Source: Tubulanus polymorphus (taxonomy: Eukaryota > Animalia > Nemertea). From it: a stretch of 64,000 bases of DNA. Shown in pieces: positions 7,673 through 61,500 of the stretch. The stretch's first letter is position 1. Each line of letters opens with the position of its first letter. The DNA lies in contig NC_134035.1 in assembly GCF_964204645.1 (NCBI RefSeq), positions 11,316,451 to 11,380,450 of the forward strand. The letters run 5' to 3'. Position numbers and translations under genes: made by a program. Below the pieces are notes generated by a model that was given only the letters and a program-made list of their open reading frames with translations, did not search any database and was not told where the DNA came from.

Positions 7673-8809
<1,137 letters not shown>

Positions 8810-11800: not shown

Positions 11801-12099
11801 ATGGTACTCAATTTAACTCGCGTGTTAGATTAAAAAAGTACCAAAATTGTATTCCAGTTTAGGCATATTTTCTGTATGGAATGAATTTTTTCACAAGCAT
11901 ACTTTTGAATTAAATAATTGGCATTGCGCAATCACCATTTACATACATACAATAACATAAAACATATATTCCCAGTCGAAATTATCGTCTCGAAACAAAA
12001 TAGAAACACATGCATTATGAAAAATATTTATAGATCCATCATTATATACAATACAGCGCTGTAGATATAGAAAGCGATAATAATGATATGAAAACTTAC

Positions 12100-14078: not shown

Positions 14079-14399
14079 CATCCTTGCCTGCCAGGGTTTG
14101 ATTGCCTCCTGCCAACGCAAACCCAGGTCGCAGACACTTCATTGGTCTATTACACCGCCCAAGATTTCTTGAGGAGACTGGTTGCCGCTCAGTGACCACC
14201 GGTCTATGTATTAAGCCAATCAGATGCATTGTTTTTCAGTCAGATTCACTCTATCATTACAACGCATCTGATTGGCTAATCTGATCAAGCATCGAACCTG
14301 TCCACCCAATAAATCTTGGGCAGTATAATAGACCAGTGAAGGGTCTGCAACCAGGGTTTCTGTAGGAGTGAGGCAATCATACCCTGGTAAGCGAGGATG
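14079..14399. mobile_element. Fold-back MITE with ~90 bp inverted arms and inner CCAAT palindrome
   Basis: CATCCTTGCCTGCCAGGG...GCCCAAGATTT pairs with AAATCTTGGGC...CCCTGGTAAGCGAGGATG; inner AGCCAATCAGATGC / GCATCTGATTGGCT. Confidence 0.75.
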
Positions 14400-15196
14400 T
14401 GTTCGGGTGAAGTAAACTCAAAACTTTTTTCGACGAAATCTACTGAAGTATTTGAGTGACTGGCCCTACTAGAAATGGTTCATCAAATATGTTAACAAAT
14501 ACCACGACAGCAAACGTTAATCTAGCTTGACATACCCTCGGTAATTTTGGAGTTTGACACTTGTGCGCCCCCTCCTGATGTATTTCGAGATTCAGCCATT
14601 ATAATTTTCTTTCCGAATGAATGAGTCTCTAGATAATCACTTGGTGCAAGTCGTTAAAATATCTTACACAATCCGTAAAAACAACAGAAAATCCCCAATA
14701 ACAAAACACAATTCCAAACAGTTGCGAAATGAAATTCAACCCCGGAGTCAAAACATCGGAATTGATTTCAACTTGAGAGTTAACTGTAACTCACAACTGT
14801 TGAACAGGGTCCATGAGAACAGAAAAAAAGTGTATTTCAGTATCTTTTTTGTTACCTATGCAAAAAAGCTTTCGAATGAATCGATTGATTTTTTCTACTT
14901 GAATGAATGAAAGTTGCTGAAGGCAGCTCGTATTGTGCTGAGCATGTTTTTAAAATTAGCGCTCATGTTTATCCACATATTAAGCGTGTATGTAGTTCTA
15001 CGAACCCGGTTTCATAATATTCAAATCTTAAATCGACTTAATATTGTTTATCTAAATCAATTTTATGAGTAAATTCACTTTCATAAAGCAAGATCCAGTT
15101 TTGATAATCGAAAGTGAAATCATTTACCTCTGCAAGTGAAACTTACAACAACTGTCGGTCTAGAAATTGTGGACAAGGGTCGAAGTTACGACTTTA

Positions 15197-15454
15197 CCCT
15201 TTCAGTGCGAGGTATAAATCGATGATGGACTTTGCAAGTACAACGCGAGCGATGTATCATTGATGTCTCATTAGTGATGAGTTTTTATCTTGATTGAAAG
15301 ATGGCAGCACCTGTCAAACATAGTGAAATATTGGTAACTAATGATACACCGCACCGTGGTGTAGACGCACTAAATCAGTTACGCACTGGGGTGGAATTTC
15401 TTGAAATTATCTCTAGCACTTCAGGGTATTAATCATTAGTCAACACTGAAAGGG
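15197..15454. mobile_element. piggyBac-type MITE, copy 1
   Basis: CCCTTTCAGTG...CACTGAAAGGG termini flanked by TTTA/TTAA; homologous to 16683-16940. Confidence 0.8.
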
Positions 15455-16682
15455 TTAAATTAATCGAAGAGCTATGTAAAGCGGGACCTGGAGTTGACAA
15501 ACCGAAGCGAAATCATTTACAATTGAAACTATCAACAACTGTGGGTCTAGAGATCGTGGACATGGGTCGAACTTACGACTTAAGTAATGCTAATGATCAA
15601 ATTACGACTTTCAAATTATTCCATTCCGTTGACTATAGAACTAGGAACGAACGAAATGACTATTATCAGTACTGGATTCACAGACGTTGCGGGCAGGAGT
15701 GGTAGAAATAACGTCAATTAATATTCATTCTTCGAGTAGTAATTAATCACGCGAATGAAGAACGAACGCGTTAATATTAATACATTATTCAAACGAAGCG
15801 AGCACAGCACAATTATACATGCAGTACGACGATGACGACGACGTATAATATCATTTTGTCGTTATGTTTGAGCAGCAGAGCCTGTGTTTGACCAATACCG
15901 TAGCGTCTTGAGTGGATAACATACAATCAAGTAAAAAAAAATAACATCGTCAAATCAATCTTCGTCGTAAACGGTGACGATTATAACGAAGCCGATTCGA
16001 CGTGCGGTAAAAATAAAAACGCTTTGTTACTTAGTGACAATAACCTGTAAAGACAGACGTACGGATGAAATAAGAAAAATCTGAAGTAAATAACCCGGCG
16101 CAATAATAATCAAGGAAGAAACTAAATTCGACATTTCGACCTAATTCTACAGGCCATTTTCAAATTCAAAAAGTCTTTAAAAAATGGCCCGCAGCCATTT
16201 TTCAATAGGCCATTTTCAAAAACATCAAAAACGTTAAATGCTGATTTAGTTTTTCTTTATCATTATCATGGGTTTTTTGCTTCAAATAATGGTATTAGTC
16301 ACTTGTCTATGGAAACCCAAGTAAAATCTTCCCTGAATGCAGCATCGTTTGATGACATCACGAGAGCCGACCGCCTCGCAAAAGACGAGACAGTTCTGGA
16401 GAATCAACTCACACGGCCACGGAACATGTTAACTACCCGGCATGATCTTAGGTAAGCTTCTTTAATTGGATGGGCTTATAACAACCAATTCCAATATGCC
16501 ATTTGTGACAATATCGGATCGTGAAACTAAACCACAGACAGGTTACTGACTGACTAGGTACGATCTTAACGGAATATGGTCCATTTTTGAAATAAGTGCG
16601 TCATGTTTCAGTTAGATATAAATTGTGCCCCGTATACTACTCGCAAGCTAACAGTTGATCTGAAATCCAGACCATTGATTAA

Positions 16683-29932: not shown

Positions 29933-31015
29933 TTAACGCTGTGATCGCCACACGCAGCAGCAAAATGCCGCGCAAAAATATTCACGAATTTCTCGTCCCA
30001 GTAAAAGATAAATGTAAAAGTTAACCGAGTAGTTACATACTTGGAACTGTGTGAACACGTCTAAAAGGAAATCTTTATCATCGGTGGAGATTGGTAGGAA
30101 TATCGGAATGGACGATGGAATCGTGAATAATCCAAACGCGAGTGAAACTGTTAAAAGCATTATTGTAGTGCGCTTAGATTTTGTATTTTTCCTTTCAGAC
30201 GAAACCATTTTTGAACTTCTCAATAACTGGACTATGATAACAAAATTCGATGTGATTATCAGAGTTAAAGGTACGATGTAAATGTATACGACAATTGTAA
30301 TAAACAGTATGAATTGATGAGCTAATTCGGAGTAACATGTGAAAAACTGGTCAGAAAAGTATATCGACGCACTAGGAAGAAGATATAGGATCAAAGCATT
30401 CACTCCGATGATGATCAGTATAACAAATCTTGCGAATTTCGGTGTACAAATCAAACGAGATGTGAACGGGAAGAGAACAACTGCCGCACGTTCTAGAGAT
30501 ATTGCTACTATCAACCACGAACTATTCATTGCTGCGAATGTCATTAAAATCTCGTAGATTTGGCAACCTATTAGTGATCGGATCGCAAATATAGGACCAG
30601 TTGCTACGTGCAAGAGAACAAACTGTAAGACGGGCATCAAAGATAGATTTATGCAGAACACAAAATCATTGACTGACAACATGATAAGGTAGTTAGCGTA
30701 TGATAATCCCCGGAATCTGCGACTTATCATTATCAGGAAAGTAGCTGAATTTCCAAATGTTCCTGACAGGAACAGAATTACCAGAATAACCAATGACAGC
30801 GTAAGGTAGCTACCAGACTTGTTTGCCAAAGACATAAGAACGATATAACTGTTGTAAGTTAGACCAATCTGCGTCTGAGAAGAATTCATGATCAACAACG
30901 AAGAACAATTGCGCGGTGAATGGGTGCTAATGGCCGACTCACTGTCTCCAGACGTATTGAACAATTCATTTAATGGTTTGAATGAAATCCATATTAATAA
31001 AGTTTCATTTATCAT
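29933..31015 (-). CDS. Intronless rhodopsin-class (class A) GPCR, peptide-receptor-like (FMRFamide-R / GPR139-142-like group)
   Basis: 7 hydrophobic segments; TM1 GN, TM2 LSVND, TM3 Cys and SSWLIVAISLER, ECL2 Cys, TM5 P, TM6 FGLFTIP, TM7 NYSVNFYIY, C-tail CCC; N-terminal N-glycosylation sequons. True start codon uncertain. Confidence 0.88.
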   Translation of the reverse strand: MINETLLIWISFKPLNELFNTSGDSESAISTHSPRNCSSLLIMNSSQTQIGLTYNSYIVLMSLANKSGSYLTLSLVILVILFLSGTFGNSATFLIMISRRFRGLSYANYLIMLSVNDFVFCINLSLMPVLQFVLLHVATGPIFAIRSLIGCQIYEILMTFAAMNSSWLIVAISLERAAVVLFPFTSRLICTPKFARFVILIIIGVNALILYLLPSASIYFSDQFFTCYSELAHQFILFITIVVYIYIVPLTLIITSNFVIIVQLLRSSKMVSSERKNTKSKRTTIMLLTVSLAFGLFTIPSSIPIFLPISTDDKDFLLDVFTQFQVCNYSVNFYIYLLLGREIREYFCAAFCCCVWRSQR

Positions 31016-32756
31016 TAGCTGTCATTCATCATTTGTAATAGATCAAATCTCATTTCAACTAACAATAGTTGTAGACACGTTTAAGAAAACTAACACCATT
31101 GTTTATTGACATTTGTGCAAGTTTATCTATTACCAGGTACATAAGGCGCAAAAAAATTGAAAATAATTTCTGGAAGTCGAAAGGTAGCAGCAACTTACTG
31201 TCTTGTGTAGAATTTTATCTGCAGTCAGTCGTGTCGCACAGTTCAAATGTTTCGCAAGTTAAAAACAGTTCAGTCAAAATATATTAAACTTGCTTGAATT
31301 CAAGAAATTCCAAATTAAAAGTAGTTTATTTCAGTGACGATATATTACTAGTAAAAAAGAGTTATATTCAGTTTAATTTTGAAAATGCTACGAATAAAAA
31401 GTTTATTAATTTCATTAATTCTAAGAATTTATTTAAGGATTTAACAGCGGCTGAGTTCAAATTGCACGATTCATATTTCACTGAAAAGCCACTGTTTAGG
31501 CCAATGATGAAAATAGCAGGTTTTCAAAACAAAGCGGCGAAGTTCAGTTGCTCGGGTAAACTAGTGAGGTGAGGCGTCCATTGCCGAACCTCGAGTAATC
31601 AGACTGAATCCAAAGCTAGTCAGGTCCCAGATAGCAAAACATGGCTTATCCGGGTCCAGAAGTTACTGAGGCGAAAGTAAGGCTTAGGCGTTAGGCAAAG
31701 TGACCAAGTCATTTGACCGCAGCTGGTCCGTGCTACGATTTTGGCCCATCTCGACGCAAATGGCGACCCATTCAAGCACTTGGAGACTCCATTTGCATAA
31801 GTTGCTTATTGCAAAACAGATATACTTTATCGCAATATGAGGGATAACGATGATTCACTGATGATTTTCGGGCCGATCTCTTGCCCGGGTTTATGACCAG
31901 CGGATGCTGTGGCAAGCGATGAGAAAGCGTAAAATTGATTAATAAACTGCATTTGAATTTCAATTGAATAGCCATATATTTATGAATTGAATTGATCTGA
32001 AGGTCGTGTGGGTATTCAATTAAATTGAATTTTATTGTAGAAAATTACACTGGTTGACAAAAAGGTCGATGTTAGATCCTATAACTGACAAAAGGTTACC
32101 CTTAACAAACTGTGGCATTTATCGAGTAATTAAACGAGACTTATTTGTAAGTTGAAGTGTGGTTGTTGCTGTAATTTAAGGTCAATCGAAGTTTGAATGT
32201 AATTGTCATTGTGAAGTAGTAAGTAGTCTAGTATACACTTTGGTTGGGGCGGGGATACCCCTCCAGTCCACTCCAGCACAGTCCAGGATTTGACTTGGAT
32301 TATTTCATTTTCAAAAGCTGTGGTTGGGTTTGCAGCCATGGGGCTACTCGTAGTTAGTTATAATCCTAGTTAGTTACCTAATCATTGGTGGTAAGCTATT
32401 TTAATGGGATGGGCTCGTGGTTTGTGGTTAATTTCTGATCGTGAAACTGAACTGGCACTGGCACAGACCGGTTACTGACCACATTAATTAATTGCGTGGG
32501 GTGAAAACCACCACAATGCCTGAGAATGCGTAGCTATGCTAGCCTAGCAGCCATAATCTGGGTTGTCCCCTGATTTACGTGCTTTAATGAACTTAACGCA
32601 CAAATTTTTTTAACTATAGGATATAGAAGATTTTGGAATGGTCGTCTGAGCCTTTAAAGAATTCGAAGAATGAACAAATGAAATGTGGATGAAAATCTTC
32701 ATTTCGGAATGAATTGATAGCATTGAAATCGTCGAGAGCGAAACAAAGAAGTGACG

Positions 32757-33917
32757 ATGTTGTATCGCAGCAATTTCGACAAACATTTTTCTAAAGTTGT
32801 CACCGCCAGAAAATTGTTTATTCGCCTAATTTTCTGTCTGTGCGTGGTCGGCGTATTGATGATATTACGAACGTCTTACCACTGGATCGCCGTGGGCGAC
32901 GTCGACGATCGATTGATGGATAAAATCTTGCGAACCGATTTGAAAACGTGCGCGAAGAACTGTTTTCCACGAATGAACATCGATGAATCGTTCCCGAAAT
33001 TCCCGTGTCTGACGGGAATCCCGCCGTCGGTGAATCGTACGAGTTTAGTAATCGTCGTCGCGAGTCAAGCGCATTTAAAACACGAACGCGATCTGACGCG
33101 CGCGATCTGGACGCGACGTCGAGCGTACGACATCGACGTGAAATTCGTACTCGGTAAAACGCGGTTGACGACGTCGCGACGCGAGTCGTTGCTACGCGAG
33201 ATGAACGACAATAACGACATCATCGTCGGCGACTTCGACGACACGTATCGTAACCTGACGCTGAAAACGATCTTCGCGATACGTTGGGTCGTTGCGAACT
33301 GTCGCCGCGCGAAATACGTGATGAAAACCGACCACGACGTCGCTGTTAACATTGACAACTTGATGACGATGCTCGCGCTCGACGCTCCGTCCGGGATCGT
33401 CGGCGACTGTTTCGGCCCGTTTGCGCCGATACGCCGACCCGATGACAAGTGGTACACGCCGATGTCCGAATATTCGCTGTCGTATTTTCCGAAGTATTGC
33501 TCGGGTATCGGTTACGTGGTATCGATGAATGCGGCGCGGGCGCTCGTGCGGCTGTCACCGGTCGTGCGTCCGCTCGCGATGGAAGACGTCTACGTCGGTT
33601 TATTACTGTCGAAACTCGGCGTCGAGAAACGACGCGTGCGCGGGTTCGATCGAGTTCGCTCGTGGGCGCCGCAGAGCGACGAATATTTCTGCGATTGCGT
33701 CATCGCTGGACATGAATATACGTTCTCGGAAAGAGAGACGAACGGTCGAGCCGTTCTCGGTAAACGTTGCGTAATGCGCGGCCGATTTCATTGTTTCCTA
33801 CTGATATTAAGAGCGCGTTACGTATTAACCTGTCTCGCAATTATAGCGTCTTTTATTTTAATTAGATGTTTGGTAGTTTTCATGAGATTCGCTATTTATC
33901 GTTATTTCAAGCGTTAG
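32757..33917 (+). CDS. GT31 beta-1,3-galactosyltransferase-like glycosyltransferase, single coding exon
   Basis: Type II N-terminal TM; motifs DIIVGDFDDTYRNLTLKT, KTDHDV, KWY, PKYCSGIGYVVS, EDVYVG. First ATG at 32757 (the ORF track starts at a GTG). Possible 5' UTR intron 31569-32619. Confidence 0.9.
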   Translation: MLYRSNFDKHFSKVVTARKLFIRLIFCLCVVGVLMILRTSYHWIAVGDVDDRLMDKILRTDLKTCAKNCFPRMNIDESFPKFPCLTGIPPSVNRTSLVIVVASQAHLKHERDLTRAIWTRRRAYDIDVKFVLGKTRLTTSRRESLLREMNDNNDIIVGDFDDTYRNLTLKTIFAIRWVVANCRRAKYVMKTDHDVAVNIDNLMTMLALDAPSGIVGDCFGPFAPIRRPDDKWYTPMSEYSLSYFPKYCSGIGYVVSMNAARALVRLSPVVRPLAMEDVYVGLLLSKLGVEKRRVRGFDRVRSWAPQSDEYFCDCVIAGHEYTFSERETNGRAVLGKRCVMRGRFHCFLLILRARYVLTCLAIIASFILIRCLVVFMRFAIYRYFKR

Positions 33918-35325: not shown

Positions 35326-37681
35326 ATAATCTGTTAATTCAGTGTGTTATTTTATATACATTAAAATAACGAAAACCAGGCGGCTACGTAAATTCGGAGG
35401 GGAGCTGTTGGAAAACAAGTAATTTATTTTATGGCCTTGTTTAAGTTCCACAACTTTTGTTAAGCTGGCTACTGGGGCGTGTGCAACCCGGCAGTAGAAC
35501 CTTCTATAAGCTTTCAATGTAAATACAATGGAGATACACAATTGCGGTTTTTCAGAGTTGTTGATATCATTCGCACGCGCTATTGAGCAAAATTGGAATA
35601 CTTCACCGACTGACCACCGGTGTGTAAAACCATAGCTCGCAGGCGGGGCCTGACACAAAAGGTTTTTGACCCCAGTATCCTAGGTACTATGTATAAAAAT
35701 AACCACCAGACTGAAACATCCATGCTGGGCTAACCCAACAGACAAGAGAGCTACAAAAAATATGTTAACTTTTGCAGCAAGAAATAAAAAAAAGAAACTT
35801 TTATACAGAATTGAACTAAGTTAAGTTTGCACGAAATCGTTTCAACCCAAAAACTAATCATTCTACGCTTTACGCCAATATACAGGATAACGTCCTATCT
35901 CCGCTAATACTTGCATGCAATGAATGGGAATATTTCGTAACTTTCATGATAATTTTACAAAATAAACAGATGAAGGCTTTCTAATAAAACCACATATGAC
36001 AAATACGGCATCTAGTAGGGCTGGCATATTATAGTACGGGACTTAGTTTTGTTCAACTTACGAGCATGAATAGACCCCACGATCATTCGACTATGACCAT
36101 GTGAAATCTGAATGAATCATGCGATTCATATACCTTCCACAGCCCCAAATCTCCAATAATTTTACCACCTAATTTGCCAACCAACCTCCTTGCAGAATGA
36201 ATATATTTCCAGGGTCGGTTTTGGGTTTTTAATGAGATTGTAAACTAGGCATACTTTCAATATTTTGGAAACTAATGTTCATATTCATAAACATGTCTTT
36301 TTAATCAGATGTATTTGCCTTTATCCATCGCTTCCTCAAAGGATTTCTTCACAAGATTCTGATAAAATGGCCACCCTGTCATTGATGTAGACTTCGGGTG
36401 CTCATTTTTATGGGACTGTTTGAGTTTGATCTTGACGTGAACAAATCTACGCAGTGTCATTTGAACTTCTAGACATCTCCTGAGATGTTTTACTCTCTCA
36501 TTCGACCACACCCTATAAAGTCTAGCAATTGAAATTCGATTTGCATAGATCTGCCCTCGTGGTGTGAGCTTCAAGCCCAAGCTACTTCATCGGTTTTAGT
36601 GGTTAATTGTTAAGCATCCATAAAGTTATATCCTCGTACTTTCGATATTTCCTTTTCGATTTTGTTTATGTTGCTAATTCTTCATTTCTCGTCAAGGCTT
36701 TTGAATTGCAGTTGAATATTGTATTGTAATGGTGGATACATGGGTGGGCCTACCTTTCCTTTGCTTTACATTTTCCATTGTACGGTCCTAAGGAGCTAAC
36801 TGTTTCTAACATTTATTACCCGAAGATTCAGTGTTTCGCTGCTATCTTTCAGTGGGCCAACGAGTTGTTGTTTGTGAAATCTGCTAAAATCTACTGTTCG
36901 GATAATATCATTTAATTATCTAGCTATACCGCTGAATGAATCCAATATGGTTTATTATCTTAGGATACTACAAGACACGAACGACGTAATCTAAGCAAGA
37001 TAAGTAAACGGTAGGCCTTTACAAATACGGGCAGAGTATATTAATCGATTAGTTTATGTATTCGCCACAGTATTTAGGGGCAGCACTAGACGATTGATAT
37101 TTGACAGAGCTGTGGCATGTGAGCAGGAAATTCAACCGCGATTCTTTTATCTAACCCTCACAATTAGATATTAGTCAATAACCCTAGGTATTAAATCTAA
37201 TTTCATTAAAAATAAACGATAAAACATCGATCAAAACGGGTTTTCAAATGACGTGGACTGAAAATAAATTCCGTTCAATAAAATATATACATTTGGGTTT
37301 GCATTTGATCGTAGACTTCGGGCGGAATTTCTCCACAATCGTTCATTCGAGTACTAGTCTTTGACACGATCAGATGGCGTTCTCTCGAGCTCTTCAGCTT
37401 TTGCTGTTTTTCCTGGCGGTTTTGTGGCGCGGTGTTTTTCGGAGTGGTGGCGTGGCGCCGGTGGCGGTGGATGGAGTTATGTGTGCGGTGGATGGAGTTA
37501 TGTGTGCGGTGGATGGAGTTGTGTGCGCGGTGTGTGCAAGAGGAGTGAATGGAGTTTATATGTGTCGTATGAATGTGTGGTATATTTTATATCTTATTTT
37601 TTTCATTATTTTTCTATATTATTTTTGTTTTTTCATTTTTTTTTCTTTCATTTCATTCGTCCCTCGCCCCCGCCCTCTCAA

Positions 37682-38308
37682 TCTCAGGGTTTCAACTGGC
37701 AGCGGCGGAGTCGGAGTTCTCTAGTGTGGCCTCGTCCCACCCAGCTAGTGGCGGAGTGCTGGTGATGCGGATGTTACTACAGGGTACCTGCGATCAGAAT
37801 AAGATGGGGGCGGTAGCAATCTTCGACTGAGGGGGCTGTTGGATCTTTAGGTCCCCAGTTTGGTCCATTCTAGTCTGAATCTGCTGGTTCATTGCCTAAG
37901 GCTACCCATTGGCATCTTGCTGATGGGCTCCCCGTTCACCCAGTTTTTCCTCTGTCATCTGGGTGTCGGTTGTCTTAGGTGGTGTGCTCAATTCTCAATT
38001 GGGTCCCCAGTTAGGTCCATTCTGGTCTGAATCGGCTGGTTTCTTCGCCTAAGGCTACCCATTGGCAGCTTGCTGATTGGGCTCCCCGGTCACCCAGTTT
38101 TTCTCTCTCATCTGGGTGCCGGTTGTCTTTTGGTGTTGATGCTTGAAGATCGGATATCCCCCGAAGCCGAAGTTGTTTGTCACTTCCCGTCTTACTCTGA
38201 TTGCGGGTCCTCCGTAGTAACACCCGTGTCGTCAGCACCCCGCCACTAGCTGGGACGAGGCCACGTTAGAGAACTCCGACTCTGCCGCTGCCAGTTGGAA
38301 CCCTGAGA
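37682..38308 (+). ncRNA. Long fold-back hairpin (arms 37682-37852 and 38141-38308) with a directly duplicated structured loop
   Basis: Arms alignable over ~170 bp; most substitutions give G-U pairs on +; loop contains two ~135 bp direct copies (37850-37984, 38002-38135). Confidence 0.6.
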
Positions 38309-39288
38309 ACTAAGACTTTGCTGTTATCAGCCAGAAGTTCTGTGCTGACTTCTTTCTCTTTCTCAGGTTAGATCAAATATGATGTAAAGCCGTTAAAACC
38401 ATGTATTACCAGCGTCTATATGGTTGTACTTCAATTAAAGCCGTAAAACTCTGGAAATTTTATTTTTCATCCAAGGTTCTTTCCCCTTCCATCAAAATCT
38501 TTCCCAATTTTTCTTGTCGCAGCAGATGATATCGTCTATATTGTATTCGTGAACTCTGTAATCTCGAACATCTTTTGTGTACTTCAAATACATCGTTAAC
38601 TCTGTAGCTTCGATTTCTGATTCAGACCCCTCATCCTGGCCTTTCATCATTTTCTTCATCCACTATCAAAGTTAGATATAGTCGCAAATTGTCTTGTTAA
38701 TCAATGATTATGTACTGTTTAATTTCAGCTCATTACTTGGGGCAATAGTGATATATCAGGGGTTGATTTTTACTAATTCAAAAATGCAGGTGTTTGATTC
38801 TCAGAAAAAACAGCCTGGCATTAGGAGGGGCTAGTGGTATTTTGGTGTTAATTTCTTACTAGCTCTAAGGCAAAAAAACTCTGACATTCCGTTCTCAAAA
38901 AACCTGGCTTATCGTGTTGGGAAGAGGTACATGGTTTGGCTGTATATGTACCCAGACACGAATGGAGCTGGCATAAATCTGTGGCACAATAATAGTTAAT
39001 ACTAGGCATAGGGATAGGGATGGTTATGAGATGATTAAAGCTTTCTCAAACCACAGTGGTCAGGCTCTGTCTGACAAATATTTTGACCTAATATATAATA
39101 TGCTCTCTTCATCTTGTCATTTCGCTAGACAGAAGTCAAACTCCGAAGGTGGGAAGTCTGGTGATACCAACATCCATAATCCGACTCCGGGACTGAGTCC
39201 GATGGCACCCTTGGACGTTCCAACAACATCATTCCCTAGTCAACACACGGGACAAGCAACTTGGAGGATGAAGACATCAACGCAACTA

Positions 39289-40170
39289 TGTCTGCACTTC
39301 AATTTAAAAAAAACTTTAAAAATATGTAAAACTTAGACAAAATTCTACCTTGTAAACTTTCGGACTACTTCGATTTTTGAAAAAAAAATTATGTAAGATT
39401 GACTGCTATATCTGCACTTCGATTTAAAAAAAAAAACTTTAAAAATAGGTAAAACTTAGACAAAATTCTACCTTGTAAACTTTCGGACTACTTAGATTTT
39501 TGAAAAAAAAATTATGTAAGATTGACTGCTATATCTGCACTTCGATTTAAAAAAAAAACTTTAAAAATAGGTAAAACTTAGACAAAATTCTACCTTGTAA
39601 ACTTTCGGACTACTTCGATTTTGAAAAAAAATTATGTAAGATTGACTGCTATATCTGCACTTCGATTAAAAAAAAAAAACTTTAAAAATAGGTAAAACTT
39701 AGACAAAATTCTACCTTGTAAACTTTCGGACTACTTCGATTTTTGAAAAAAAAATTATGTAAGATTGACTGCCAATCACATAACTATATCTGCACTTCGA
39801 TTTAAAAATAAAACTTTAAAAATAGGTAAAACTTAGACAAAATTCTACCTTGTAAACTTTCGGACTACTTGGATTTTGAAAAAAAATTATGTAAGATTGA
39901 CTGCTATATCTGCACTTCGATTTAAAAAAAAAACTTTAAAAATAGGTAAAACTTAGACAAAATTCTACCTTGTAAACTTTCGGACTACTTGGATTTTGAA
40001 AAAAAATTATGTAAGATTGACTGCTATATCTGCACTTCGATTTAAAAAAAAAAAAACTTTAAAAATAGGTGAAACTTAGACAAAATTCTACGTAAATTTT
40101 CGGACTACTTCGATTTCGAAAAAAAATTATGTTAGATTGACCGCAGATCACACAACTATATCTGTACTTC
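39289..40170. repeat. Tandem array, ~120-bp unit, ~7 copies
   Basis: Unit TATCTGCACTTCGATTTAAAA...ACTTAGACAAAATTCTACCTTGTAAACTTTCGGACTACTTCGATTTTGAAAA...GATTGACTGC. Confidence 0.95.
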
Positions 40171-41371
40171 AAACGAGAGCCTGAGATCAACAACTCATCT
40201 AAAATCTGCCGATGAGAGAACAGCTCACATAACGGGCCAGTTTGAATTCAACTCATCAGCCAACAAACTTAGATGATCCACGTCGATATTGAACCCAGCA
40301 ATCATAAAAGGTAACTTGATGTACATGGAAAAATTTTGATTCATTCTAAATGAAATCTTTTGTCATTACAGGATATCTTCTTATGATCATTGCAGCTAAA
40401 ATTCAACTATACGAAAAAGCCCAGCTTGAGATCAACTACTCGTCCAAAATCTACAAACTGGAACGGTGCACAGAAAAGGCCAGAACTGAACCCAGCATTC
40501 TTTAAAGGTAAGTTGATATACATGTACATGGAATTACCGGTATATAGAAATTTCAAGCCTCGTATGAATATCATTTAATAAGTGGCTATCATCAAAATCT
40601 ATTTACCGGTCCAAATGGCTGATCTTTTATCTTCACTAGTCTTAAACAATGATAAACTAGTCCTACTACTGCTATTAATAATTGGGGTTTAAATCGGCAA
40701 TTGACGTCAATGAATTTTACTTTGTGAAAAACACGGTGGCCTGTAATTTGAAATGACATGTAAATTATGATAAATCTGACTGAAATGTTTTGCTTTCTTC
40801 ACTTTGTTTCAGCCAAACTAACATCATCGAGAAGACACCCACAACGATTACTGATTGACCCATTTGCTGATGAAAATTGCAGAAGCCCAGGTGATAAGTT
40901 TAGGAGCCAGCGACGGATAAATCACTCAACGATGCATTCTTCTACAATCAGTGGTTGATTTCTATAAAACATTTTATCAGGGGCAGCATAAACAATAGTG
41001 CATGTTATAAACACTGAAATCCAGGAGCGGCGAAGATAATAGCGCACTTCTGTAGTAAAGTATTGATTATTTTACTTATCCCCCTTTTTCAAACCAGTCT
41101 GATGGATAATATAGTGTTTTCGAGGAAACTATTTTATAATATTTTATGCAATGTGAGAGTCTAATAAAAGCTTAGCTCCATTAATTCAAGATATTGGTCT
41201 TCGATCCTTGGTCGATAGATAAGTCAAGTTAGGTTAGTGACAAGGGGTAAATGTTGGCGTCGAGCGCCTAGTTTTGACTCGTAGGTCTGTTGAGTTAACT
41301 CCTTAACTGAGATATAGTTTCAACATCATATTGTGAGTTTTATCATGCTTTAGTAGTTAAACATAGTCAAC
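40135..41371. repeat. Segmental duplication copy 1 (paralogue at ~45005-46468)
   Basis: Colinear blocks from GATCACnCAACTATATCTGTACTTC to TAGTTAAACATAGTCAAC. Confidence 0.9.
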
Positions 41372-44289
41372 CCTGTCTTGCTAGGCCCTTTCAGGCCTCA
41401 TATGACTATTGTTTAACTGACAATCAAGATATAGATAGAACAATTTACTAATTAACCAATCGCTTAGATATAAGCAATCATACAATATCTTGTAATGTTT
41501 GATGAGAAATTCTTCTGGTGTAGATATTTCAAGGCCCCATATACATTTAGGTCGGCTTTACTTAAAGATATATCAATTCAACTTTATCGTCGGTTAATAG
41601 ATTTTTCTTTACAAATAATATATTGATAAATTTATAAAGATTGAGGCCATACTTTACAGTATATACTGTGTGCTGCCTCACACATAACAATAATGAATTT
41701 CATAAGATAGTGTCTAGGGCTCTATCGAGGTCTGGTGTTATATGGGGAAAACTATGGACTACGGGTCTTTATGAAACAGTGATTTGGTCTCAACACTTTG
41801 ACAAATCCAGAATAAACCAAAGCTTTAATTGATTTAATTCATTCCTGAAACACTGCGTCCTGTTTTGGGCGAAGCATGATAATTATTGTTTGACTGACAA
41901 TTAGCATAAATACAGCCAGGAAAAATGGCTTAGATATTCACAATTAAGATGAATTCAATATTTGATGTTAGATCAAAAACTTTTTATATCATAAATATTT
42001 ATTGAAATATAGCTGAAATATATAATATATTTGAGCACATCTTGAATCAGTCTCATTGACTGATCAGTTCTGTATCGCCAACTGCTGCGCTTACGATGAC
42101 TAGCCATGCTTTTCAATATTGCCAAAATTTACTCTAACCTAACTGATTCAATTAATATCTAAAAGCCATACTGTGTGTCAAGTGACGCATATTGGATATA
42201 GTTAATCGACAATTAGAATCTAAGATGAATTACTCATTAACGTATTACTTAGATCGATTAAGGTTAATTCAATTGTTATGTGAAATTATTTCTAATTCCA
42301 TGGACATTTAAAATGTAGCTGATACATGTGTATCTGAGCACATTTATTTATCTGTATCTAAGTGAACCTATTGTGTCTTCATACAGCTGTATTAGTTTTG
42401 ATACATATTGCCAAAATCATTTCACGCAGATTTACTTCCGATCGAAGGGAGATAAAACAAATCTGTACACAAATACATTCCTGGATTTGGAAGAGGGAAT
42501 ATTTCAATTTCACTGTGTATGTCAGATTGAAAGCCTTATTCTGACAGGATATCCTAAACTTAGGTCTTATTCCTCTTGCTAATAGGTCTCTTTTACTAAC
42601 CCCTCTCCTTCAAACTATTTTCTAGCATCATGACTCGCACCGCACCAGGGAGGTCCGGTCATAACAAGGTCTTTCGGTCCTTATACACAGTGTACTGTAT
42701 ACGGGAAATAAAGATTATATAGCCATTCGGCTAAGGGAATTTCTATTTTACCACTAAAAATATGCTTTTTTATCTTTAATTTCTGATGAATTCAAATAGT
42801 GACGAATTCACCACATCTGAAATTCTACTCATGTAGATTTTCAGGCTCCATATAAATATTGTTCAACTGACAATTAAAATATAGCTAGTATGATTACTAA
42901 TTAATGGTTCGCTTAGATACCTAGAATTCAATTAAAATCAATTCAATATAATGAATATAAGTGAAACTTATTCAAAATTGTGCAGTGGATGAGACGACTG
43001 TATCGTGCAATGTCGTTTGCGTCTAACTGGGCCACATGTGTGTGGGATCTGTTGAATCAGTTAGGTTTTGGGGAATTCTGGGTTAGTTAAGCTAGGTATC
43101 AAAAGCTCTGATGCAAAATCAGCAGTTCAAATAGTGATTAATTCAAATTCGTACCGGATCTGAAATTCTTCTCGTGTAGAAATTTCAAGCCCCTTATAAA
43201 ATATTGTCCGAGACAATTTCAATTATAGCTAGGACATTATCAATTAACTAATTGATTAGGTATCTAATTCAGCATCTTCATATAAGGTGAAAGTGCTCAA
43301 ATCTAAACCATAGGGGTTGATAAGACAACTGTATTATTTAATATTGATTGATATATAAAGAATACTGGTTAACTGTTTAAACTCTGTCTCTTGTGCGTGT
43401 GAATCTTTAAGGCTTTGCAGAATTCTGGATTTGTCGAGGTGTGGGAATGATTCAAGGTTTCTTAAATCTGTAGAACCATGTTACTTATAGGATCAGTGTG
43501 CTCAATGCTGGCAGCGCACTCACTCTTCAGTTAGTTATATTATCATAATTACAAGATCATTGTATATATTAGGAGCAATATTTAGAATTAATGAAATGGA
43601 TTAGAATACCATTCACTGGGTACAGATGTCACCACCTATGGGTAGAAAATATCTCTTAAGTTTATTAACTGACGATGAAGTTAATTTGATAATACGAACA
43701 TGGTTTTGCTGACAATCGAAATATATATATGCCAATATTACTAGCAGGTTTGCACTGTATGATGGGCCTGGGTTTCAATAAAAGACACATCAATAATTTC
43801 AAGAAGATAGAAAAGAATACAGTTCAAAAACGATTTGCCAAGATTGATTATGCATTACTAAATTTGTTGTAACTCTGGTATTCCTAGAGATGACTATAGA
43901 TGCTTTAGTTGAATTGTTGTTAAACTAAAAATAATCAACCATTGCTTAGATGTTTAGAATATAGATGAATTACTATATGAGTTGAATTTCATAAATATCA
44001 TTTAAGACTATTATAAAAAATCTACATAACGATCCACATTGCTGATCTTATATATGAATTGACATGACAATTATGACCAGTGATATTCGAAAGCATTTTC
44101 TGCTCAAAAGGTTCTGCTCTTTTCTTCAGCTTGCCGTTTCAGACTGATTGGAAGATAGTTTGAAAGAACCAGAATCGAATTTCCCAATTATGTACTTCGA
44201 TTTCAGACATACTGGAGAAAAACTACAATAAACTTAAAAAAATTAGACAAATTTAAACGGTGAAAACGACAAAAAAATTTAAGTTAGAC

Positions 44290-44940
44290 ACAATTCTCCC
44301 ACCTTGTAAACTTTCGGACTAGTTACATGAAAAAAAGACCAAATATTGTAAAATATAGTTATTTCCAAAATCTCGATGTATTAAATTAGGCAGAAAAAAA
44401 TAGATAAAATTATTCAACCTTGTAAACTTTCGGACTAGTTACATGAAAAATAGACCAAAAATTGTAAAATATAGTTATTTCCAAAATCTCGATGTATTAA
44501 ATTAGGCAGAAAAAAATAGATAAAATTATTCAACCTTGTAAACTATCGGACTAGTTACATGAAAAAAAGATCAAATATTGTAAAATATAGTTATTTCCAA
44601 AATCTCGATGTATTAAATTAGGCAGAAAAAAATAGATAAAATTATTCAACCTTGTAAACTTTCGGACTAGTTACATGAAAACAATACCAAATATTGTAAA
44701 ATATAGTTATTTCCAAAATCTCGATGTATTGAATTAGGCAGAAAAAAAGTTAACCCCAATCAGTCACTTAATATGTGCTTCGACTATTTAAATGGTGAAA
44801 ACGACCAAAAAAAATTGAAGTTAGACAAAATTATTAAACGTTGTAAACTTTCGGACTAGTTACATAAAAAAAAGACCAAATATTGTAAAATTATCTTCAA
44901 CCTTGTAATATAGTTATTTCCAAAATCAGAATTAGGCAGA
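44290..44940. repeat. Tandem array, 116-bp unit, 4 full copies plus partials
   Basis: Unit CAACCTTGTAAACTTTCGGACTAGTTACATGAAAA...CCAAAATCTCGATGTATTAAATTAGGCAGAAAAAAATAGATAAAATTATT. Confidence 0.95.
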
Positions 44941-45004
44941 CTAAAAGATTGTTAGAATGAACCGGAACCGAATTACCAATTATGTTCTTGGACTTAAGAT
45001 CTGT

Positions 45005-46468
45005 AAGAACGACCGCCGATCACGCAACTATATCTGTACTTCGACTTCCGATTTTGAAAAAAACCACCGTTTCGCTCCTGGCAGGTGTGGTAGGTTTGTA
45101 AGGGACACCAACTTGAAATGTCAAACAAGAGCTTGAGGTCAACAACTCATCAAAGATCTGCCGATTAGAGAACAGTGCACAGAAACCAACCGACTTAGGA
45201 GATCCTCGTCGATGATGAAACCAGCAATCATAAAAGGTAACTTGATACACATGGAGTTATTACGATGATTTCTAAATGTCGTGATTACAGGATATATTTC
45301 TTTACTCATTGCAGCTAAGTTTTAACTATAAGAAAGAGACCAGCTTAAAATCAACTACTCATCTGAAATCTACGGATTTGAACAACCCACAGAAGACTCT
45401 AACTCATTAGATGGAAATTACCGGTATATAGAAATTTCAGGCCTCATATGAATATCATTTGATAAGTGATTATCATCGAAATCTATTTACCTGTCCACAT
45501 GGCTGATCTTAGAACTTTTATCTTTACTAGTCTTACACCTTGGAGTAATAAATTTTTCAAATGATTACTCCAAGCTTAAACATTGATGAACTAGTCCTAC
45601 TACTGCAATTATTTATTGGGGTTTAAATCGGCAATTGACGTCAATGAACCTAATTCTGATTTTGGAAATAACTATATTAACTAAGTGAAAAACACGGTGG
45701 CTTGTAATTTGAAATGACATGTAAGTTATGATAAATCTGTCTAAAATGTTTTGTTTTCTTCACTTTGTTTCAGTCAAACTACATCCCGGAAATAATGGTC
45801 TGAAGAAGACACCCACAACGATTACTGATTGACCCATTTGCTGATGAAAACTGCAGAAGCCCAAATGAGAAGTTTAGGGACCAGCGACGGATTAATCACT
45901 CAACGATGGATTCTTCTACAATCGGTGATTTCTATAAAACATTTTATCAGGAGCCGCAGAGACAATAGTGAATCTTATAAACACTGATTCAAGCGACAAA
46001 GCTAATGGATTATCTCATAAACACTGATTCAGGATAAACACTGTTTTAAAAGCAGCAAAGACAATAGTCTATCTTATTAGGAGCAGCATAGATAATAGTG
46101 CTTCTAAACACTGAGATCCAGGAGCAGCGAAGATAATAGCGGAATTCTGTAGTAAAGTATTGATTTTTTTGCTTATCACCTTTTTCAAACCAGTCTGATG
46201 GATAATATAGTGTTTTCGAGGAAACTATTGATAATGTTTATGCAATGTGAGAGTCTAATAAAAGCTAAGCTCCATTAATGCACGATTTTGGTCTTTGATC
46301 TTTGGTCAATAGATAAGTCGAGTTAAGTTAGTCACTAGGGGTAAATGGTCGTGTTGAGTGCCTAGTTTTGACTTGTAGGTCTCTTGAGTTAACTCCTAAA
46401 CTGAGATATAGTTTCAACATGAATTGTGAGTTTAATCTTCCAACTTACCATAGTTAAACATAGTCAAC
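45005..46468. repeat. Segmental duplication copy 2
   Basis: Paralogous to 40135-41371, with extra insertions at ~45536-45574, 45649-45679 and ~45950-46110. Confidence 0.9.
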
Positions 46469-58559: not shown

Positions 58560-61500
58560 TTATAGTCCGAAATGCTTGTTAATGGAATCAATGAGATCGG
58601 CCTTTTTCGTTCCTTTCATTTTAATCTTCATTTGACCGATGCAAGCCTTCAGAACCGGTACGGTTAATTTATTCAACTGAAAAAGACGAAAAATTTACAA
58701 ACATTGCATTCAGATTTGTTAAGCGAGGGTCATCTGAAACCTTGAGGTTAACATTCCTATGATATAATACATTAGATTTTTCATAGATCTTTCACACCCG
58801 ATCATTCACAAGACTTGCTGAGTGACTTATTTTTGAAACTTCTCAAGGCAACCTGGACTGTTAGAAGGCAATTGGATTTGAACCTTAGACAGAAAAATTT
58901 ACTGATTTAAGAATCAGGGAAATAGGTTTTTCCATAGTAAATTCACTGAATTAAGTAAGAAGGAGTCTACTGTATGTCTATTACGTTCTATACCTGTCCA
59001 GCCTTCGCTTCTTTTTCGATATCAATATCGACCTCGTCTCCGTCGTTCTTAGTTCGTTTGGCCGCGTTTCCCGTCGCAGGCGCTTTACGTTTCGCGGCCG
59101 ATTTACCGTCTTTGTAACCGTCCGGAAACACGAGGTCTTCGAATTCTTTGATGACTTTGCCGGCGCGTTTCATCATTTGCTCGTGATTAGGAACTGAAGT
59201 ATATAAACAATAATCAACCAAATATACTTCACAAAATCTGTTGCCTCATCATTTAATCTTCGTAATGTCAAACACCTCCCATAACGCTTCACATATTTTC
59301 TATCTGAATGAATGAAATGCAATATTCTTTTGATGTAGAACGATGTAGAACGATAACCACACTCAAACGTGGTGAACGGATAATAACCTGACGATGATCT
59401 CTAGGGTGAGATCGAAACGTTGTGTATTCTATATATTTTAGATTGAATAAATAAATTCTTGTTTTTAAATTCTTTTAATCTGTAGATAGTGGGTTTTTAT
59501 CTTATTTTTTGATGTAATTCAATCTTCATGGGCCAGTTACACGGTCTTGGCTAAGATGCCACTTTGATTTGACACTGTCCATTCCCCGACATGCACATTG
59601 TTTTCCATGACTGGATCTGCTAAAAATCCAATCAATGAACATAGTCAAATATGTAAAACATAGACAGAAACTGTTTGATTATATGTGCGATCTCAACAAA
59701 TTTCCCTGACTTTTCCCTGATTTTTAGCTTTTTTACAAAATTCCCCGACTATTCCCAGACTGAAAAACAATTTCCCTGATTTCCAGGTGAGCGACCGTGA
59801 AACAGTTCATACTGACTCGTAAGATCATCAGTTGGCTCCGGTTCATCGCGTTCCAAAGCTAACGCTTCCAAATTCGCGTAGTATTTCTGTAACGCCGGAT
59901 TCTCGAATTCGTCGCTCGAGAATTTGAACGATAATTTCTTGATGACATCTTTCGCTTTCTCAATCTGTTCCGTATTCGCTGCAAAATATCGATTATCACC
60001 ATAAAATATCGCGATACAGCGAAATGATATATAGGGATCATTCATTTATTACGTACGCATAAAATTTGAATTTTTCAACCCCCCCTCCCCCTCTGTACTC
60101 CAAATCGGCCATTTTTTCATATACATTAAGCATTACAGTACGCAATTGCACTGACCCCTCCCTTGATGCGTACGTAATAAATGAATGACCCCATAGCATA
60201 ATATCCATGAAAGCTTCCCGAGAACTGGCTGTACGAATGTGGTATAGGTATGTACTACACGCACCTCGAGGCATTTCCTCAAATTTCAACGTGCGAAGAT
60301 CGTCGGCGAATGGAAGAAATATGACGTGGAATCCCGGTGGAGTGATTTGAACGCGCTGATCGTCGAGCTCTTCGGCTTGCGGTAACAACGCGACGAATTT
60401 CGGCGGCGTATTCTTTCGCGGCGTGTACAGACAAATCGCGATGACATTTTTCTCCAACGTCTTTTGCAGCAGTGCCGAGAACATCGTCGTACTGCCCTTA
60501 ATTACCTGAGAAATGTAAATACAGTTGTATGCGCTTACTTTATTCAGCAATGTCGGGAAAGTGAATATATTTCACTAGTTTAACTGGACAAAGTTTAAGC
60601 CGGGCGTAGGTTGGCTTTGGGACTGCTTGTGCGACACCTTCATCGCTACCGGTTCAGGGTGGACCTACCTAGTGTGCTAGAAATCAAACAATCACTTCCT
60701 TGACCAAAACTTAGTTGGCAGCATTAGTTTATTTCAGTAAAAGAGGTTTGAACAAAATTTCTATGAAACCATATTTCGAATAATAATTACTCCGATTTAT
60801 ACATACCGTTTCTTCTGGGTAAATGAACTGAGCTGGTTTCACGTGGTGGTGTCTTTTGAGGTAACTGTGTGGTTTGAATCCGAGCAAGGTTATTCCTAAA
60901 ATACAGAATTCGTAGTCGTTTGATAGTTCTACGCGCACCAGAGAGTTATACCCGTACTGTAAGAAAATTGATACACACCAGGGGCGAGTTGCCCAAAAGT
61001 TACTCAAAACCAACTTTGAGCAACTGCAGCCCCTGCACTCTCCTTGCCATGGAGCCAATTGCCTCGAATTAATGCATTCACCAGATAAAAAATTTGAGTT
61101 TTTACAACAATTCATGCGATCATGACCCATGCCTGCTTCAACTGCCCACGAATTTCCTTGGCCAGACAAAATCTATCTGTGCTGTGAGACTCGAGGCAAA
61201 TGTAGTCTGCTGTATTGAATGGTAAACTGACAGTGCGTAAGAATTCCGTTTCAAGAATTTGACGCATCAATTGTGGGATTTTCATTGTAACTGACAGAAA
61301 TGAACACTTAAAGTCTGATATTATTGAACTGAAATCAAGTGCGGCTGGTGATAAATCTCTGACGTCGATTTTTACCCGTTTTTCCGAATGTTTTAATTTC
61401 GTTGATTTCGTTTTTTTCGAAGCAGATCTTCTTCCCGCCGTATGTGGCAGCCTTTTTCAAATCTTGCGGCATCAAAATTTCGCAGGTTTCCTATTTCAGA

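What the first reader, a model, noticed from the sequence alone, without database searches (positions are those of the whole stretch)
37682..38308. Long hairpin with strand-biased G-U wobble substitutions: candidate hpRNA / endo-siRNA precursor
Seen: the two ~170 bp arms align as inverted repeats. In my by-eye alignment about 19 transitions give G-U/U-G pairs when the + strand is folded, against about 5 that give A-C mismatches. The MITE hairpin at 14079-14399 shows no such bias. The left arm begins at a strong 3' splice site (long pyrimidine tract ending ...CTCAATCTCAG at 37687). Established: neutral decay of DNA TIRs should be strand-symmetric, whereas G-U enrichment marks selection on an RNA duplex, as in Drosophila hpRNAs processed by Dicer. 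Inference: this is a functional + strand dsRNA stem rather than a dead transposon.
Basis: partly seen in the sequence, partly recalled or inferred. Interest (0 to 1): 0.8.

Follow-up and report, generated by a model that had tools for sequence, protein, structure and literature searches.

The report
Orphan long hairpin with pairing-preserving arm changes
A 627-base non-coding inverted repeat in a ribbon-worm genome has arms that differ almost only by changes that keep one strand foldable as RNA, making it a candidate hairpin-RNA gene in a phylum whose siRNA pathway is in doubt, though no expression data could be checked.

Summary
The window is Tubulanus polymorphus (Nemertea), not human. The inverted repeat is real. 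The robust arms are 37682-37808 and 38186-38308 (123 pairs, 86% identity), with a weaker extension to 37847/38146. The roughly 300-nt loop holds a 153-bp tandem duplication.

The ratio stays near 3:1 but is borderline on its own (p 0.02-0.08). A stronger signal appeared: the core arms differ by 16 transitions and 1 transversion. The same genome's neutral repeats give 4064:3528, and the target ranks first of 155 repeat pairs.

G.U-type changes occur at the same rate in the core and inner arms. Transversions are about 20-fold rarer in the core.

No target-site duplication, no second copy in 191 kb, no ORF and no Rfam or Pfam match were found.

Against: there are no expression or small-RNA data and only 17 differences. 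Nemerteans lack DICER2. The element is CpG-depleted, so deamination is a live rival. About 10 such repeats per genome are expected by chance.

Verdict: partly supported. A pairing-constrained + strand hairpin RNA is the leading reading (about 0.35). A neutral relic (about 0.30) and locus-specific transition-only mutation (about 0.20) follow.

The parts
37682..37808 (+). Left arm, robust core (5' half of the stem if the + strand is transcribed)
   Evidence: pairs with 38186-38308 over 123 pairs, 106 Watson-Crick, 12 G.U, 4 A.C, 1 transversion and one 4-nt bulge. The first 54 pairs form an uninterrupted helix on the + strand when G.U is allowed.
37736..37739 (+). 4-nt insertion in the left arm (a bulge in the stem)
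   Evidence: alignment: the only indel within the core arms.
37809..37847 (+). Left arm, inner extension of doubtful homology
   Evidence: 38 pairs at about 68% identity with 3 indels. The mismatches look neutral (G.U 4, A.C 2, transversions 6).
37848..38145 (+). Loop or spacer holding a 153-bp tandem duplication (37850-38129, 1.8 copies, 90%). It is A-poor (12% A) and has CpG o/e 0.30.
   Evidence: the two copies differ by 3 transitions and 6 transversions, which is neutral-like and unlike the arms.
38146..38185 (+). Right arm, inner extension of doubtful homology
38186..38308 (+). Right arm, robust core (3' half of the stem)
37597..37681 (+).
   Evidence: 82% pyrimidine over 37597-37687, with a TRF period-14 array at 37597-37653. 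It has no mirror on the right flank, so it is not part of the repeat.

Best explanation
This is an orphan, non-coding, GC-rich (55%) inverted repeat. It sits in AT-rich intergenic DNA of Tubulanus polymorphus chromosome OZ123236.1.

The most likely single reading is that a + strand transcript folds into a stem of about 125 bp with a loop of about 380 nt, and that pairing of this stem has been under selection. Transitions that leave G.U wobble pairs accumulated at the neutral rate. A.C mismatches are under-represented, and transversions, which always break a pair, were almost all removed.

Such an RNA would be a long-hairpin (hpRNA-like) dsRNA precursor. Nemerteans lack DICER2 but keep siAGO, so any processing would have to go through DICER1 plus siAGO or another dsRNA-binding route.

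Shown: the repeat, its folding potential, the substitution pattern and its contrast with same-genome controls. Inferred: transcription, strand, selection, processing and any target. The DNA may well have started as a transposon or a local inverted duplication; that is a separate question.
For: Core arms: 12 G.U, 4 A.C, 1 transversion.

Same-genome neutral spectrum: 4064 transitions to 3528 transversions over 194 repeat pairs. The target has the highest transition fraction of the 155 pairs with at least 12 substitutions (0.94; median 0.54, 90th percentile 0.69). P(>=12 of 17 G.U on a given strand) is 2e-4 and P(>=16 of 17 transitions) is 4e-4.

GC-matched controls, taken between copies of two MITE families at 47-62% GC, give 63:71 (Fisher p 1.6e-4). 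Without CpG sites the comparison is 9:1 against 39:71 (p 0.001).

Internal controls: the loop's tandem copies give 3:6 (p 0.002). Rates in the inner arms versus the core are G.U 0.105 vs 0.098, A.C 0.053 vs 0.033, and transversions 0.158 vs 0.008 (p 0.0007).

The longest gap-free helix is 54 bp as + strand RNA, 22 bp as - strand RNA, and 16 bp with Watson-Crick pairs only.

None of 10 other inverted repeats in 191 kb shows the pattern. There is no TSD and no second copy in 191 kb, although two control MITE families have 4 and 2 copies there. The element is unrelated to the other inverted-repeat elements.
Against: There is no transcript, small-RNA, methylation, population or cross-species evidence, and everything rests on 17 differences at one locus. 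Given the G.U count, the further lack of transversions is only p 0.06, so there is effectively one signal, not two.

At about 24,000 inverted repeats per genome, about 10 such cases are expected by chance. No gene is called over the locus and no ORF from it is in the protein collection.

Nemerteans lack DICER2, and Notospermus small RNAs showed no endo-siRNA signature (PMC11114477). No trans target was found in 191 kb, and the arms have no coding frame.

The element is CpG-depleted (0.59 against a genome median of 1.16), and 7-9 of the 16 transitions are at CpG sites. That suits a deamination explanation. The identity gradient, highest at the termini, is also typical of transposon terminal repeats.
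Confidence: 0.35

Rival explanations
1. Neutral relic. The element is a decaying non-autonomous DNA transposon (foldback/MITE-like) or a local inverted duplication with no present function. The transition-rich, + strand-biased arm differences would then be chance plus ordinary CpG decay, made to look special because the hairpin was picked out for exactly this feature.
For: The architecture is transposon-like: sharp-edged terminal inverted repeats with identity highest at the tips (95% falling to 70%). It is a GC-rich island (55%) in 39% GC flanks, has an internal tandem repeat and has no ORF.

Inverted repeats are common in this genome, at about one per 15 kb. Four of the ten controls also have no second copy in the sample. 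The G.U:A.C ratio alone is borderline (p 0.02-0.08), and about 10 such loci per genome are expected by chance. In addition, 7-9 of the 16 transitions are at CpG sites.
Against: P(>=16 of 17 transitions) is 4e-4 under the same-genome spectrum, and the target ranks 1 of 155. The excess survives removal of CpG sites (p 0.001-0.017) and GC matching.

The arms differ from the element's own loop repeats (p 0.002). There is no TSD at any boundary shift, although TSDs are recognisable for some control elements. No other copy turned up in 191 kb, and the element is unrelated to the two abundant MITE families.
Confidence: 0.3
2. Locus-specific transition-only mutation without selection. The repeat would be young, with few transversions, and would have been hit by cytosine deamination. 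Possible sources are germline CpG methylation of this element, transcription-associated deamination of the non-template + strand, or an AID/APOBEC-like or RIP-like activity on the duplex-forming arms.
For: The element's CpG o/e is 0.59 (loop 0.30). That is in the lowest 3% of GC-rich 627-bp windows in a genome whose median is 1.16. The depleted stretch runs from 37682 to about 39285.

Eight of the 12 core G.U mismatches have the T in a TpG context opposite a CpG or TpG. A.C mismatches outnumber transversions 4:1 where the neutral ratio is 0.36:0.64 (p 0.06), which a pure pairing-selection model does not require.

The transition rate in the arms exceeds that between the loop copies (p 0.0016). 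The + strand of the left flank and of the loop is G+T-rich (0.58-0.61).
Against: A general repeat-targeted process is unlikely, because other inverted repeats and duplicates have ordinary spectra (for example L029 1345-3915 at 22:19; pooled 59:49). A region-wide process such as methylation or transcription should also mark the loop copies, which give 3:6.

The arms keep more CpG (0.70 and 0.89-0.98) than the loop (0.30). Non-CpG transitions are also in excess, at 9:1. Symmetric CpG decay does not predict 8 TpG against 1-2 CpA outcomes. No RIP-like process is known in animals (own knowledge).
Confidence: 0.2
3. A DNA-level hairpin. One DNA strand would need to fold, as a single-stranded intermediate in replication or transposition or as a protein-recognised cruciform, and G.T mismatches would be tolerated in that fold.
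For: The same pairing-preserving substitution pattern applies, because G.T is the most stable DNA mismatch (own knowledge).
Against: A cruciform uses both strands, so no 12:4 strand bias is expected. Nothing in the window links the site to replication or to a single-strand transposon. No other copies were found, and long DNA palindromes are generally selected against rather than maintained (own knowledge).
Confidence: 0.05

Closest known systems
Drosophila hairpin-RNA (hpRNA) loci such as hp-CG4068, hp-CG18854 and Nmy/Tmy, which give Dicer-2/AGO2 endo-siRNAs (PMC10317233)
   Same: A long genomic inverted repeat that, read from one strand, gives an extended imperfect dsRNA stem with a sizeable loop. 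Local tandem duplications occur at such loci. The divergence here tolerates wobble pairs.
   Different: The defining functional signatures are Dicer-dependent 21-22-nt siRNAs, a primary transcript that rises in dcr-2 mutants, and arms homologous to a target gene or transposon. None of these is shown here. No target was found in 191 kb, and the host phylum lacks DICER2.
Miniature inverted-repeat and foldback DNA transposons
   Same: A short, non-coding element with terminal inverted repeats whose identity is highest at the tips, an internal tandem repeat, and a compositional island with sharp edges.
   Different: There is no target-site duplication. No second copy was found in 191 kb, where two bona fide MITE families have 4 and 2 copies. 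The arms are not built of tandem sub-repeats as in foldback elements. The arm divergence is almost transition-only, unlike the MITE controls.
Hairpin-derived endo-siRNA loci processed by the single Dicer of animals without Dicer-2 (mouse oocytes, C. elegans), as cited in PMC11114477
   Same: They offer a precedent for inverted-repeat transcripts being diced without a dedicated Dicer-2, which is the situation in Nemertea.
   Different: No small-RNA evidence exists for this locus. The only nemertean library analysed showed no 21-nt / 19-nt-overlap signature.
Engineered G:U hairpin-RNA transgenes in plants (PMC9263138, abstract seen)
   Same: Substitutions in one arm keep RNA pairing while weakening the DNA inverted repeat. 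In that study this prevented inverted-repeat DNA methylation and self-silencing. The target's stem has 12-16 G.U pairs, and its DNA arms are only 83-86% identical.
   Different: That work used designed constructs in plants with RNA-directed DNA methylation. Whether any comparable benefit exists in a nemertean is unknown.

Membership tests
hpRNA / long-hairpin endo-siRNA precursor | A genomic inverted repeat able to fold into an extended dsRNA stem from one transcript | tested here: met
   123-161 paired positions; MFE -379.5 kcal/mol (z -19); a 54-bp uninterrupted helix on the + strand.
hpRNA / long-hairpin endo-siRNA precursor | A discrete single-strand primary transcript covering both arms | not testable with these tools
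   No RNA-seq access. No gene is called over the locus, and no ORF from it is present in the protein collection.
hpRNA / long-hairpin endo-siRNA precursor | Dicer-dependent 21-22-nt small RNAs from the arms, all of one genomic polarity | not testable with these tools
   No small-RNA data for T. polymorphus. This criterion comes from PMC10317233.
hpRNA / long-hairpin endo-siRNA precursor | Arms homologous to a target gene or transposon elsewhere | tested here: inconclusive
   There is no match to the arms anywhere else in 191 kb. No consistent coding frame was found and there is no Pfam hit. The other 99.95% of the genome could not be searched.
hpRNA / long-hairpin endo-siRNA precursor | The host has the siRNA machinery (Dicer-2 and an siRNA-class Argonaute) | not tested
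   Literature only: Nemertea have siAGO but no DICER2 (PMC11114477). Tubulanus itself does not appear in that paper's main text.
hpRNA / long-hairpin endo-siRNA precursor | Evolution that preserves stem pairing | tested here: inconclusive
   Within-locus proxy only: G.U 12, A.C 4, transversions 1, against a neutral expectation of 4.5: 4.5: 7.9. No orthologues or copies were available to show true compensatory change.
MITE / non-autonomous DNA transposon | Terminal inverted repeats | tested here: met
MITE / non-autonomous DNA transposon | Target-site duplication flanking the repeats | tested here: not met
   boundary shifts of +/-8 on both sides and lengths of 2-10 gave nothing better than a 4-bp CCCT at displaced, inconsistent boundaries. 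Control elements L026:18316 (9 bp) and L027:271 (6 bp) do show one. Erosion at about 14% divergence cannot be excluded.
MITE / non-autonomous DNA transposon | Many dispersed copies | tested here: inconclusive
   There are 0 further copies in 190.9 kb on six chromosomes, which bounds the family only at about 5,600 copies or fewer per 358 Mb (genome size from PMC8468679). Control families have 4 and 2 copies in the same sample. Metagenome and viral scans found nothing, and the 23 bacterial seed hits are chance matches.
MITE / non-autonomous DNA transposon | Short and non-coding | tested here: met
   627 bp, with only short ORFs that have no family match.
Foldback element | Long arms built of tandem sub-repeats | tested here: not met
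   TRF and the repeat finder find tandem structure only in the loop (153-bp unit), not in the arms.
Any described RNA family (Rfam 15) | A covariance-model match | tested here: not met
   No hit at the gathering threshold in the window, and none at E<=1 in 37500-38500.

The most novel reading that the evidence does not exclude
This is a genuine + strand long-hairpin RNA gene in a nemertean, with a stem kept by selection. It would be the first endogenous dsRNA precursor locus in a phylum that retains siRNA-class Argonautes but has lost DICER2. It would therefore be a concrete substrate for asking what nemertean siAGO proteins load and whether DICER1 dices long hairpins there.
Probability: 0.3. 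Interest if true: 0.75.

Novelty: new member of a known kind. Interest (0 to 1): 0.5.

Why it matters
PMC11114477 describes Nemertea, Bryozoa and Entoprocta as an 'intermediate state': siAGO is kept, DICER2 is lost, and no endo-siRNA signature was detected in the one library examined. What those Argonautes bind is an open question.

A single-copy hairpin whose stem shows a pairing-preserving substitution pattern gives a specific, cheap test of that question. One would map existing or new small-RNA and RNA-seq reads to 627 bases.

If the pattern instead reflects duplex- or locus-specific deamination, it would point to targeted methylation or editing in a genome that is otherwise not CpG-depleted. 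If it is chance, the locus is one more decayed inverted repeat.

The method also carries over. Arm-versus-arm differences can be sorted into G.U, A.C and transversion classes and calibrated on the same genome's repeats. That screens all of the roughly 24,000 inverted repeats of a genome for RNA-level constraint without any expression data.

Tried and rejected
(1) Looking for copies outside the genome sample. Exact scans with the terminal motif and with a loop motif found 0 hits in metagenome contigs and 0 in viral contigs. The 23 bacterial hits extend no further than 28 bp and match the chance expectation.

(2) Protein-space probes for copies or transcripts. The one ORF wholly inside the element found no homologue. 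Exact look-up of all 7 overlapping ORFs found none in the collection.

(3) A coding origin for the arms. There are no Pfam hits. The 50-codon open frame in the left arm is broken in the right arm. For that reason, and because the operators flagged its cost, the deep protein search (search of protein representatives) was not run.

(4) A claim I made mid-way and now withdraw. I had said strand-biased transitions are general among this genome's inverted repeats (chi-square p 0.009). That depended on permissive alignments of AT-rich repeats such as L030 (0:8). Under one strict scheme the controls are symmetric (31:28; heterogeneity p 0.12).

(5) Local keto skew as the sole cause. The left flank and the loop are G+T-rich, but the flank skew comes from low-complexity tracts and the 5-kb flanks are near 0.5.

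(6) Kinship with the two abundant MITE families that share CAGGG[A/T]TT. Alignment scores are no better than shuffles.

(7) Composition as the cause of the transition excess. GC-matched controls reject this.

(8) Papers on the assembly accession: none found.

(9) Spliced genes in the window (Ku exons) were scanned exon by exon by reference only.

Full report
HOST AND CONTEXT. The window is animal DNA. It carries Ku70/80 exons, a rhodopsin-type GPCR and a galactosyltransferase. An exact look-up of the galactosyltransferase places it on NCBI assembly GCA_964204645.2, chromosome OZ123236.1, which is 13.98 Mb. The GPCR's closest relatives are all named Tubulanus polymorphus, and the best of them sits on another chromosome of the same assembly.

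The window is therefore T. polymorphus, a palaeonemertean ribbon worm. It is not human, so none of the restrictions on human contigs applied. The genome is about 358 Mb (PMC8468679).

In the 21 kb around the galactosyltransferase, which includes the hairpin, the only called genes are Arf-like, G-gamma and the galactosyltransferase. Nothing is called between 33.9 and 43.9 kb. ORFs in that stretch have no Pfam match.

THE OBSERVATION. The inverted repeat is real and far beyond chance. The robust arms are 37682-37808 and 38186-38308. They give 123 aligned pairs at 86% identity, with one 4-nt bulge at 37736-39. A weaker extension reaches 37847/38146, giving 161 pairs in all. Identity falls from 95% at the outer ends to 70% at the inner ends.

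The loop contains a 153-bp tandem duplication of 1.8 copies at 90% identity. The element is a 55% GC island in flanks of about 39% GC.

As RNA, the + strand folds to -379.5 kcal/mol and the - strand to -322.5. Both are about 18-19 SD below shuffles.

The ratio of about 3:1 is stable, but the binomial p is only 0.02-0.08.

The pyrimidine tract ending in CAG at 37687 exists. However, the TCTCAG is the tip of the repeat itself, and nothing exon-like follows it.

IS IT AN ORDINARY MITE? I sampled six further stretches of the same genome on five other chromosomes, 127 kb in all. Together with the window this makes 190.9 kb.

The element has no second copy there. Two control families do. The family at window 2077-2413 has 4 copies and carries a tRNA T-arm-like motif in each arm. 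This excludes only a very abundant family, above roughly 5,600 copies.

No target-site duplication exists at any boundary shift, although some control elements show one. The element is unrelated to any other inverted repeat in the sample. It has no credible ORF, no coding frame shared by both arms, and no Rfam match. Scans of metagenome, viral and prokaryote collections were empty or gave chance hits.

I therefore do not file it as a MITE. One defining feature (the TSD) was tested and not met, and another (copy number) is inconclusive.

THE KEY TEST. I first thought the G.U excess was unremarkable, because some control repeats showed equal and opposite biases. That conclusion was wrong in part. 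It leaned on permissive alignments of AT-rich repeats. Under one strict scheme the controls are symmetric, at 31 G.U to 28 A.C with heterogeneity p 0.12.

What does set the target apart is the full three-class pattern of arm differences: 12 G.U, 4 A.C and 1 transversion.

Neutral repeats in the same genome have nearly as many transversions as transitions:
- pooled control inverted repeats, 59:49;
- a nearby segmental duplication, 60:55;
- between-copy comparisons of the GC-rich MITE families, 63:71;
- all 194 repeat pairs found by all-against-all BLAST, 4064:3528.

Among the 155 pairs with at least 12 substitutions, the target's transition fraction (0.94) is the highest. The median is 0.54 and the 90th percentile is 0.69. 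P(>=16 of 17 transitions) is 4e-4, and P(>=12 of 17 G.U on a given strand) is 2e-4.

The excess survives GC matching and removal of CpG sites, at 9:1 against 39:71 (p 0.001).

Two internal controls agree. The loop's tandem copies differ by 3 transitions and 6 transversions (p 0.002 against the arms). In the inner arm extension, G.U-type changes occur at the same rate as in the core (0.105 against 0.098). A.C changes are somewhat commoner there (0.053 against 0.033), and transversions are about 20-fold commoner (0.158 against 0.008, p 0.0007).

That ordering is what selection for pairing of a + strand RNA predicts: G.U neutral, A.C mildly deleterious, transversions strongly deleterious. It yields a 54-bp uninterrupted helix on the + strand, against 22 bp on the - strand.

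WHY I STAY CAUTIOUS. (i) There are only 17 differences at one locus, with no outgroup to polarise them.

(ii) The two statistics are not independent. Given 12 G.U, the further shortage of transversions relative to A.C is only p 0.06. With about one inverted repeat per 15 kb, about 10 such loci per genome are expected by chance. How many hairpins stage 1 screened is unknown to me.

(iii) A mutational rival is alive. The genome is not CpG-depleted (median o/e 1.16; 1.57 in GC-rich windows), but the element is (0.59; loop 0.30). That puts it in the lowest 3% of GC-rich windows. The depletion runs on to about 39.3 kb. Between 7 and 9 of the 16 transitions sit at CpG sites, mostly as TpG on the + strand. 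So deamination has acted here, whether from methylation, from transcription of the + strand as the non-template strand, or from an editing enzyme.

Against a purely mutational account, other repeats in the genome lack the pattern, the loop copies lack it, the arms retain more CpG than the loop, and non-CpG transitions are also in excess.

(iv) The inner-arm yardstick assumes that the weak inner alignment reflects true homology.

(v) Biology of the host. Nemerteans have siAGO but no DICER2, and Notospermus gonad small RNAs showed no canonical endo-siRNA signature (PMC11114477). Tubulanus does not appear in that paper's main text. Its operational criteria are Dicer-2-dependent siRNAs, a precursor that rises in dcr-2 mutants, and arms homologous to a target (PMC10317233). 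None of these could be tested here.

VERDICT. It passed the refutation tests that could be run and gained an independent, calibrated line of support, but it lacks any expression evidence.

My ranking is as follows:
- pairing-constrained + strand hairpin RNA (hpRNA-like, with processing necessarily by a non-Dicer-2 route), about 0.35;
- neutral relic of a transposon or inverted duplication plus chance and CpG decay, about 0.30;
- locus-specific transition-only mutation without selection, about 0.20;
- DNA-level hairpin, about 0.05;
- something else, the remainder.

Origin and present constraint are separate questions, since a transposon-derived repeat can become a hairpin-RNA gene.

The decisive steps are simple. 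They are a whole-genome BLASTN of the arms, mapping of strand-specific long and small RNA reads, 5mC calls, and the same three-class statistic run over every inverted repeat in the genome.

Noticed in passing
window 2077-2413; L029 11000-11333; L026 18316-18948 and 8929-9346: An abundant palindromic MITE-like family, with at least 4 copies in 191 kb. Each arm carries GGCAGGGATTCGAACC, the reverse complement of a tRNA T-arm/3' end, so the family looks tRNA-derived. One copy (L026:18316) shows a 9-bp target-site duplication.
   Followed up: partly
Its CpG o/e is also low, at 0.43.
   Followed up: partly
window 29933-31015 (-): An intact 360-aa single-exon rhodopsin-type GPCR ORF (Pfam 7tm_1), with annotated T. 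polymorphus paralogues at up to 62% identity. It is not among the genes called for this stretch of the assembly, so it may be an unannotated gene or a recent pseudogene. The paralogues are spread over at least five chromosomes.
   Followed up: partly
window 32751-33917 (+): An intronless galactosyltransferase gene (Pfam Galactosyl_T) with a very high CpG o/e (2.26) at 51% GC. The word search found no relative closer than 41% identity, and the best hits were amphibian B3GALT5-like proteins.
   Followed up: no
window 7547-8920: About 1.3 kb is open in all six reading frames and reads as a 76-77% self-complementary low-complexity palindrome, with about 16-21% GC and almost no CpG.
   Followed up: no
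window 39286-39997, 44263-44891, and 39310-41371 vs 44263-46468: A 120-nt tandem array (5.8 copies) has a diverged second array about 5 kb downstream. Both lie inside a segmental duplication of about 2 kb at 65-87% identity. The duplication served as a neutral control (60 transitions to 55 transversions).
   Followed up: partly
window 37682-39285: CpG depletion (o/e 0.56-0.59) starts at the hairpin's left boundary and continues about 1 kb past its right end. The 320 bp to the left are not depleted (1.29). Elsewhere in the window, low-CpG patches include the Arf-like gene body and 46.0-50.4 kb. This may mark a methylated or transcribed domain, but the counts are small.
   Followed up: partly
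window 37464-37532 and 37597-37653: A G+T-rich 21-bp minisatellite (3.3 copies) and a T-rich period-14 array lie directly upstream of the hairpin. They account for most of the local keto skew.
   Followed up: no
window 60038-63055 (-): Three long exons of a Ku70/Ku80-family gene (Ku beta-barrel and Ku_N domains). They were scanned exon by exon only.
   Followed up: no
L029 7153-7596 vs 15049-15530 and 16408-16636; L027 5434-6520 vs 11124-11916: Further young repeat families at 86-96% identity in the sampled T. polymorphus loci, including an inverted pair about 7.5 kb apart on L029.
   Followed up: no
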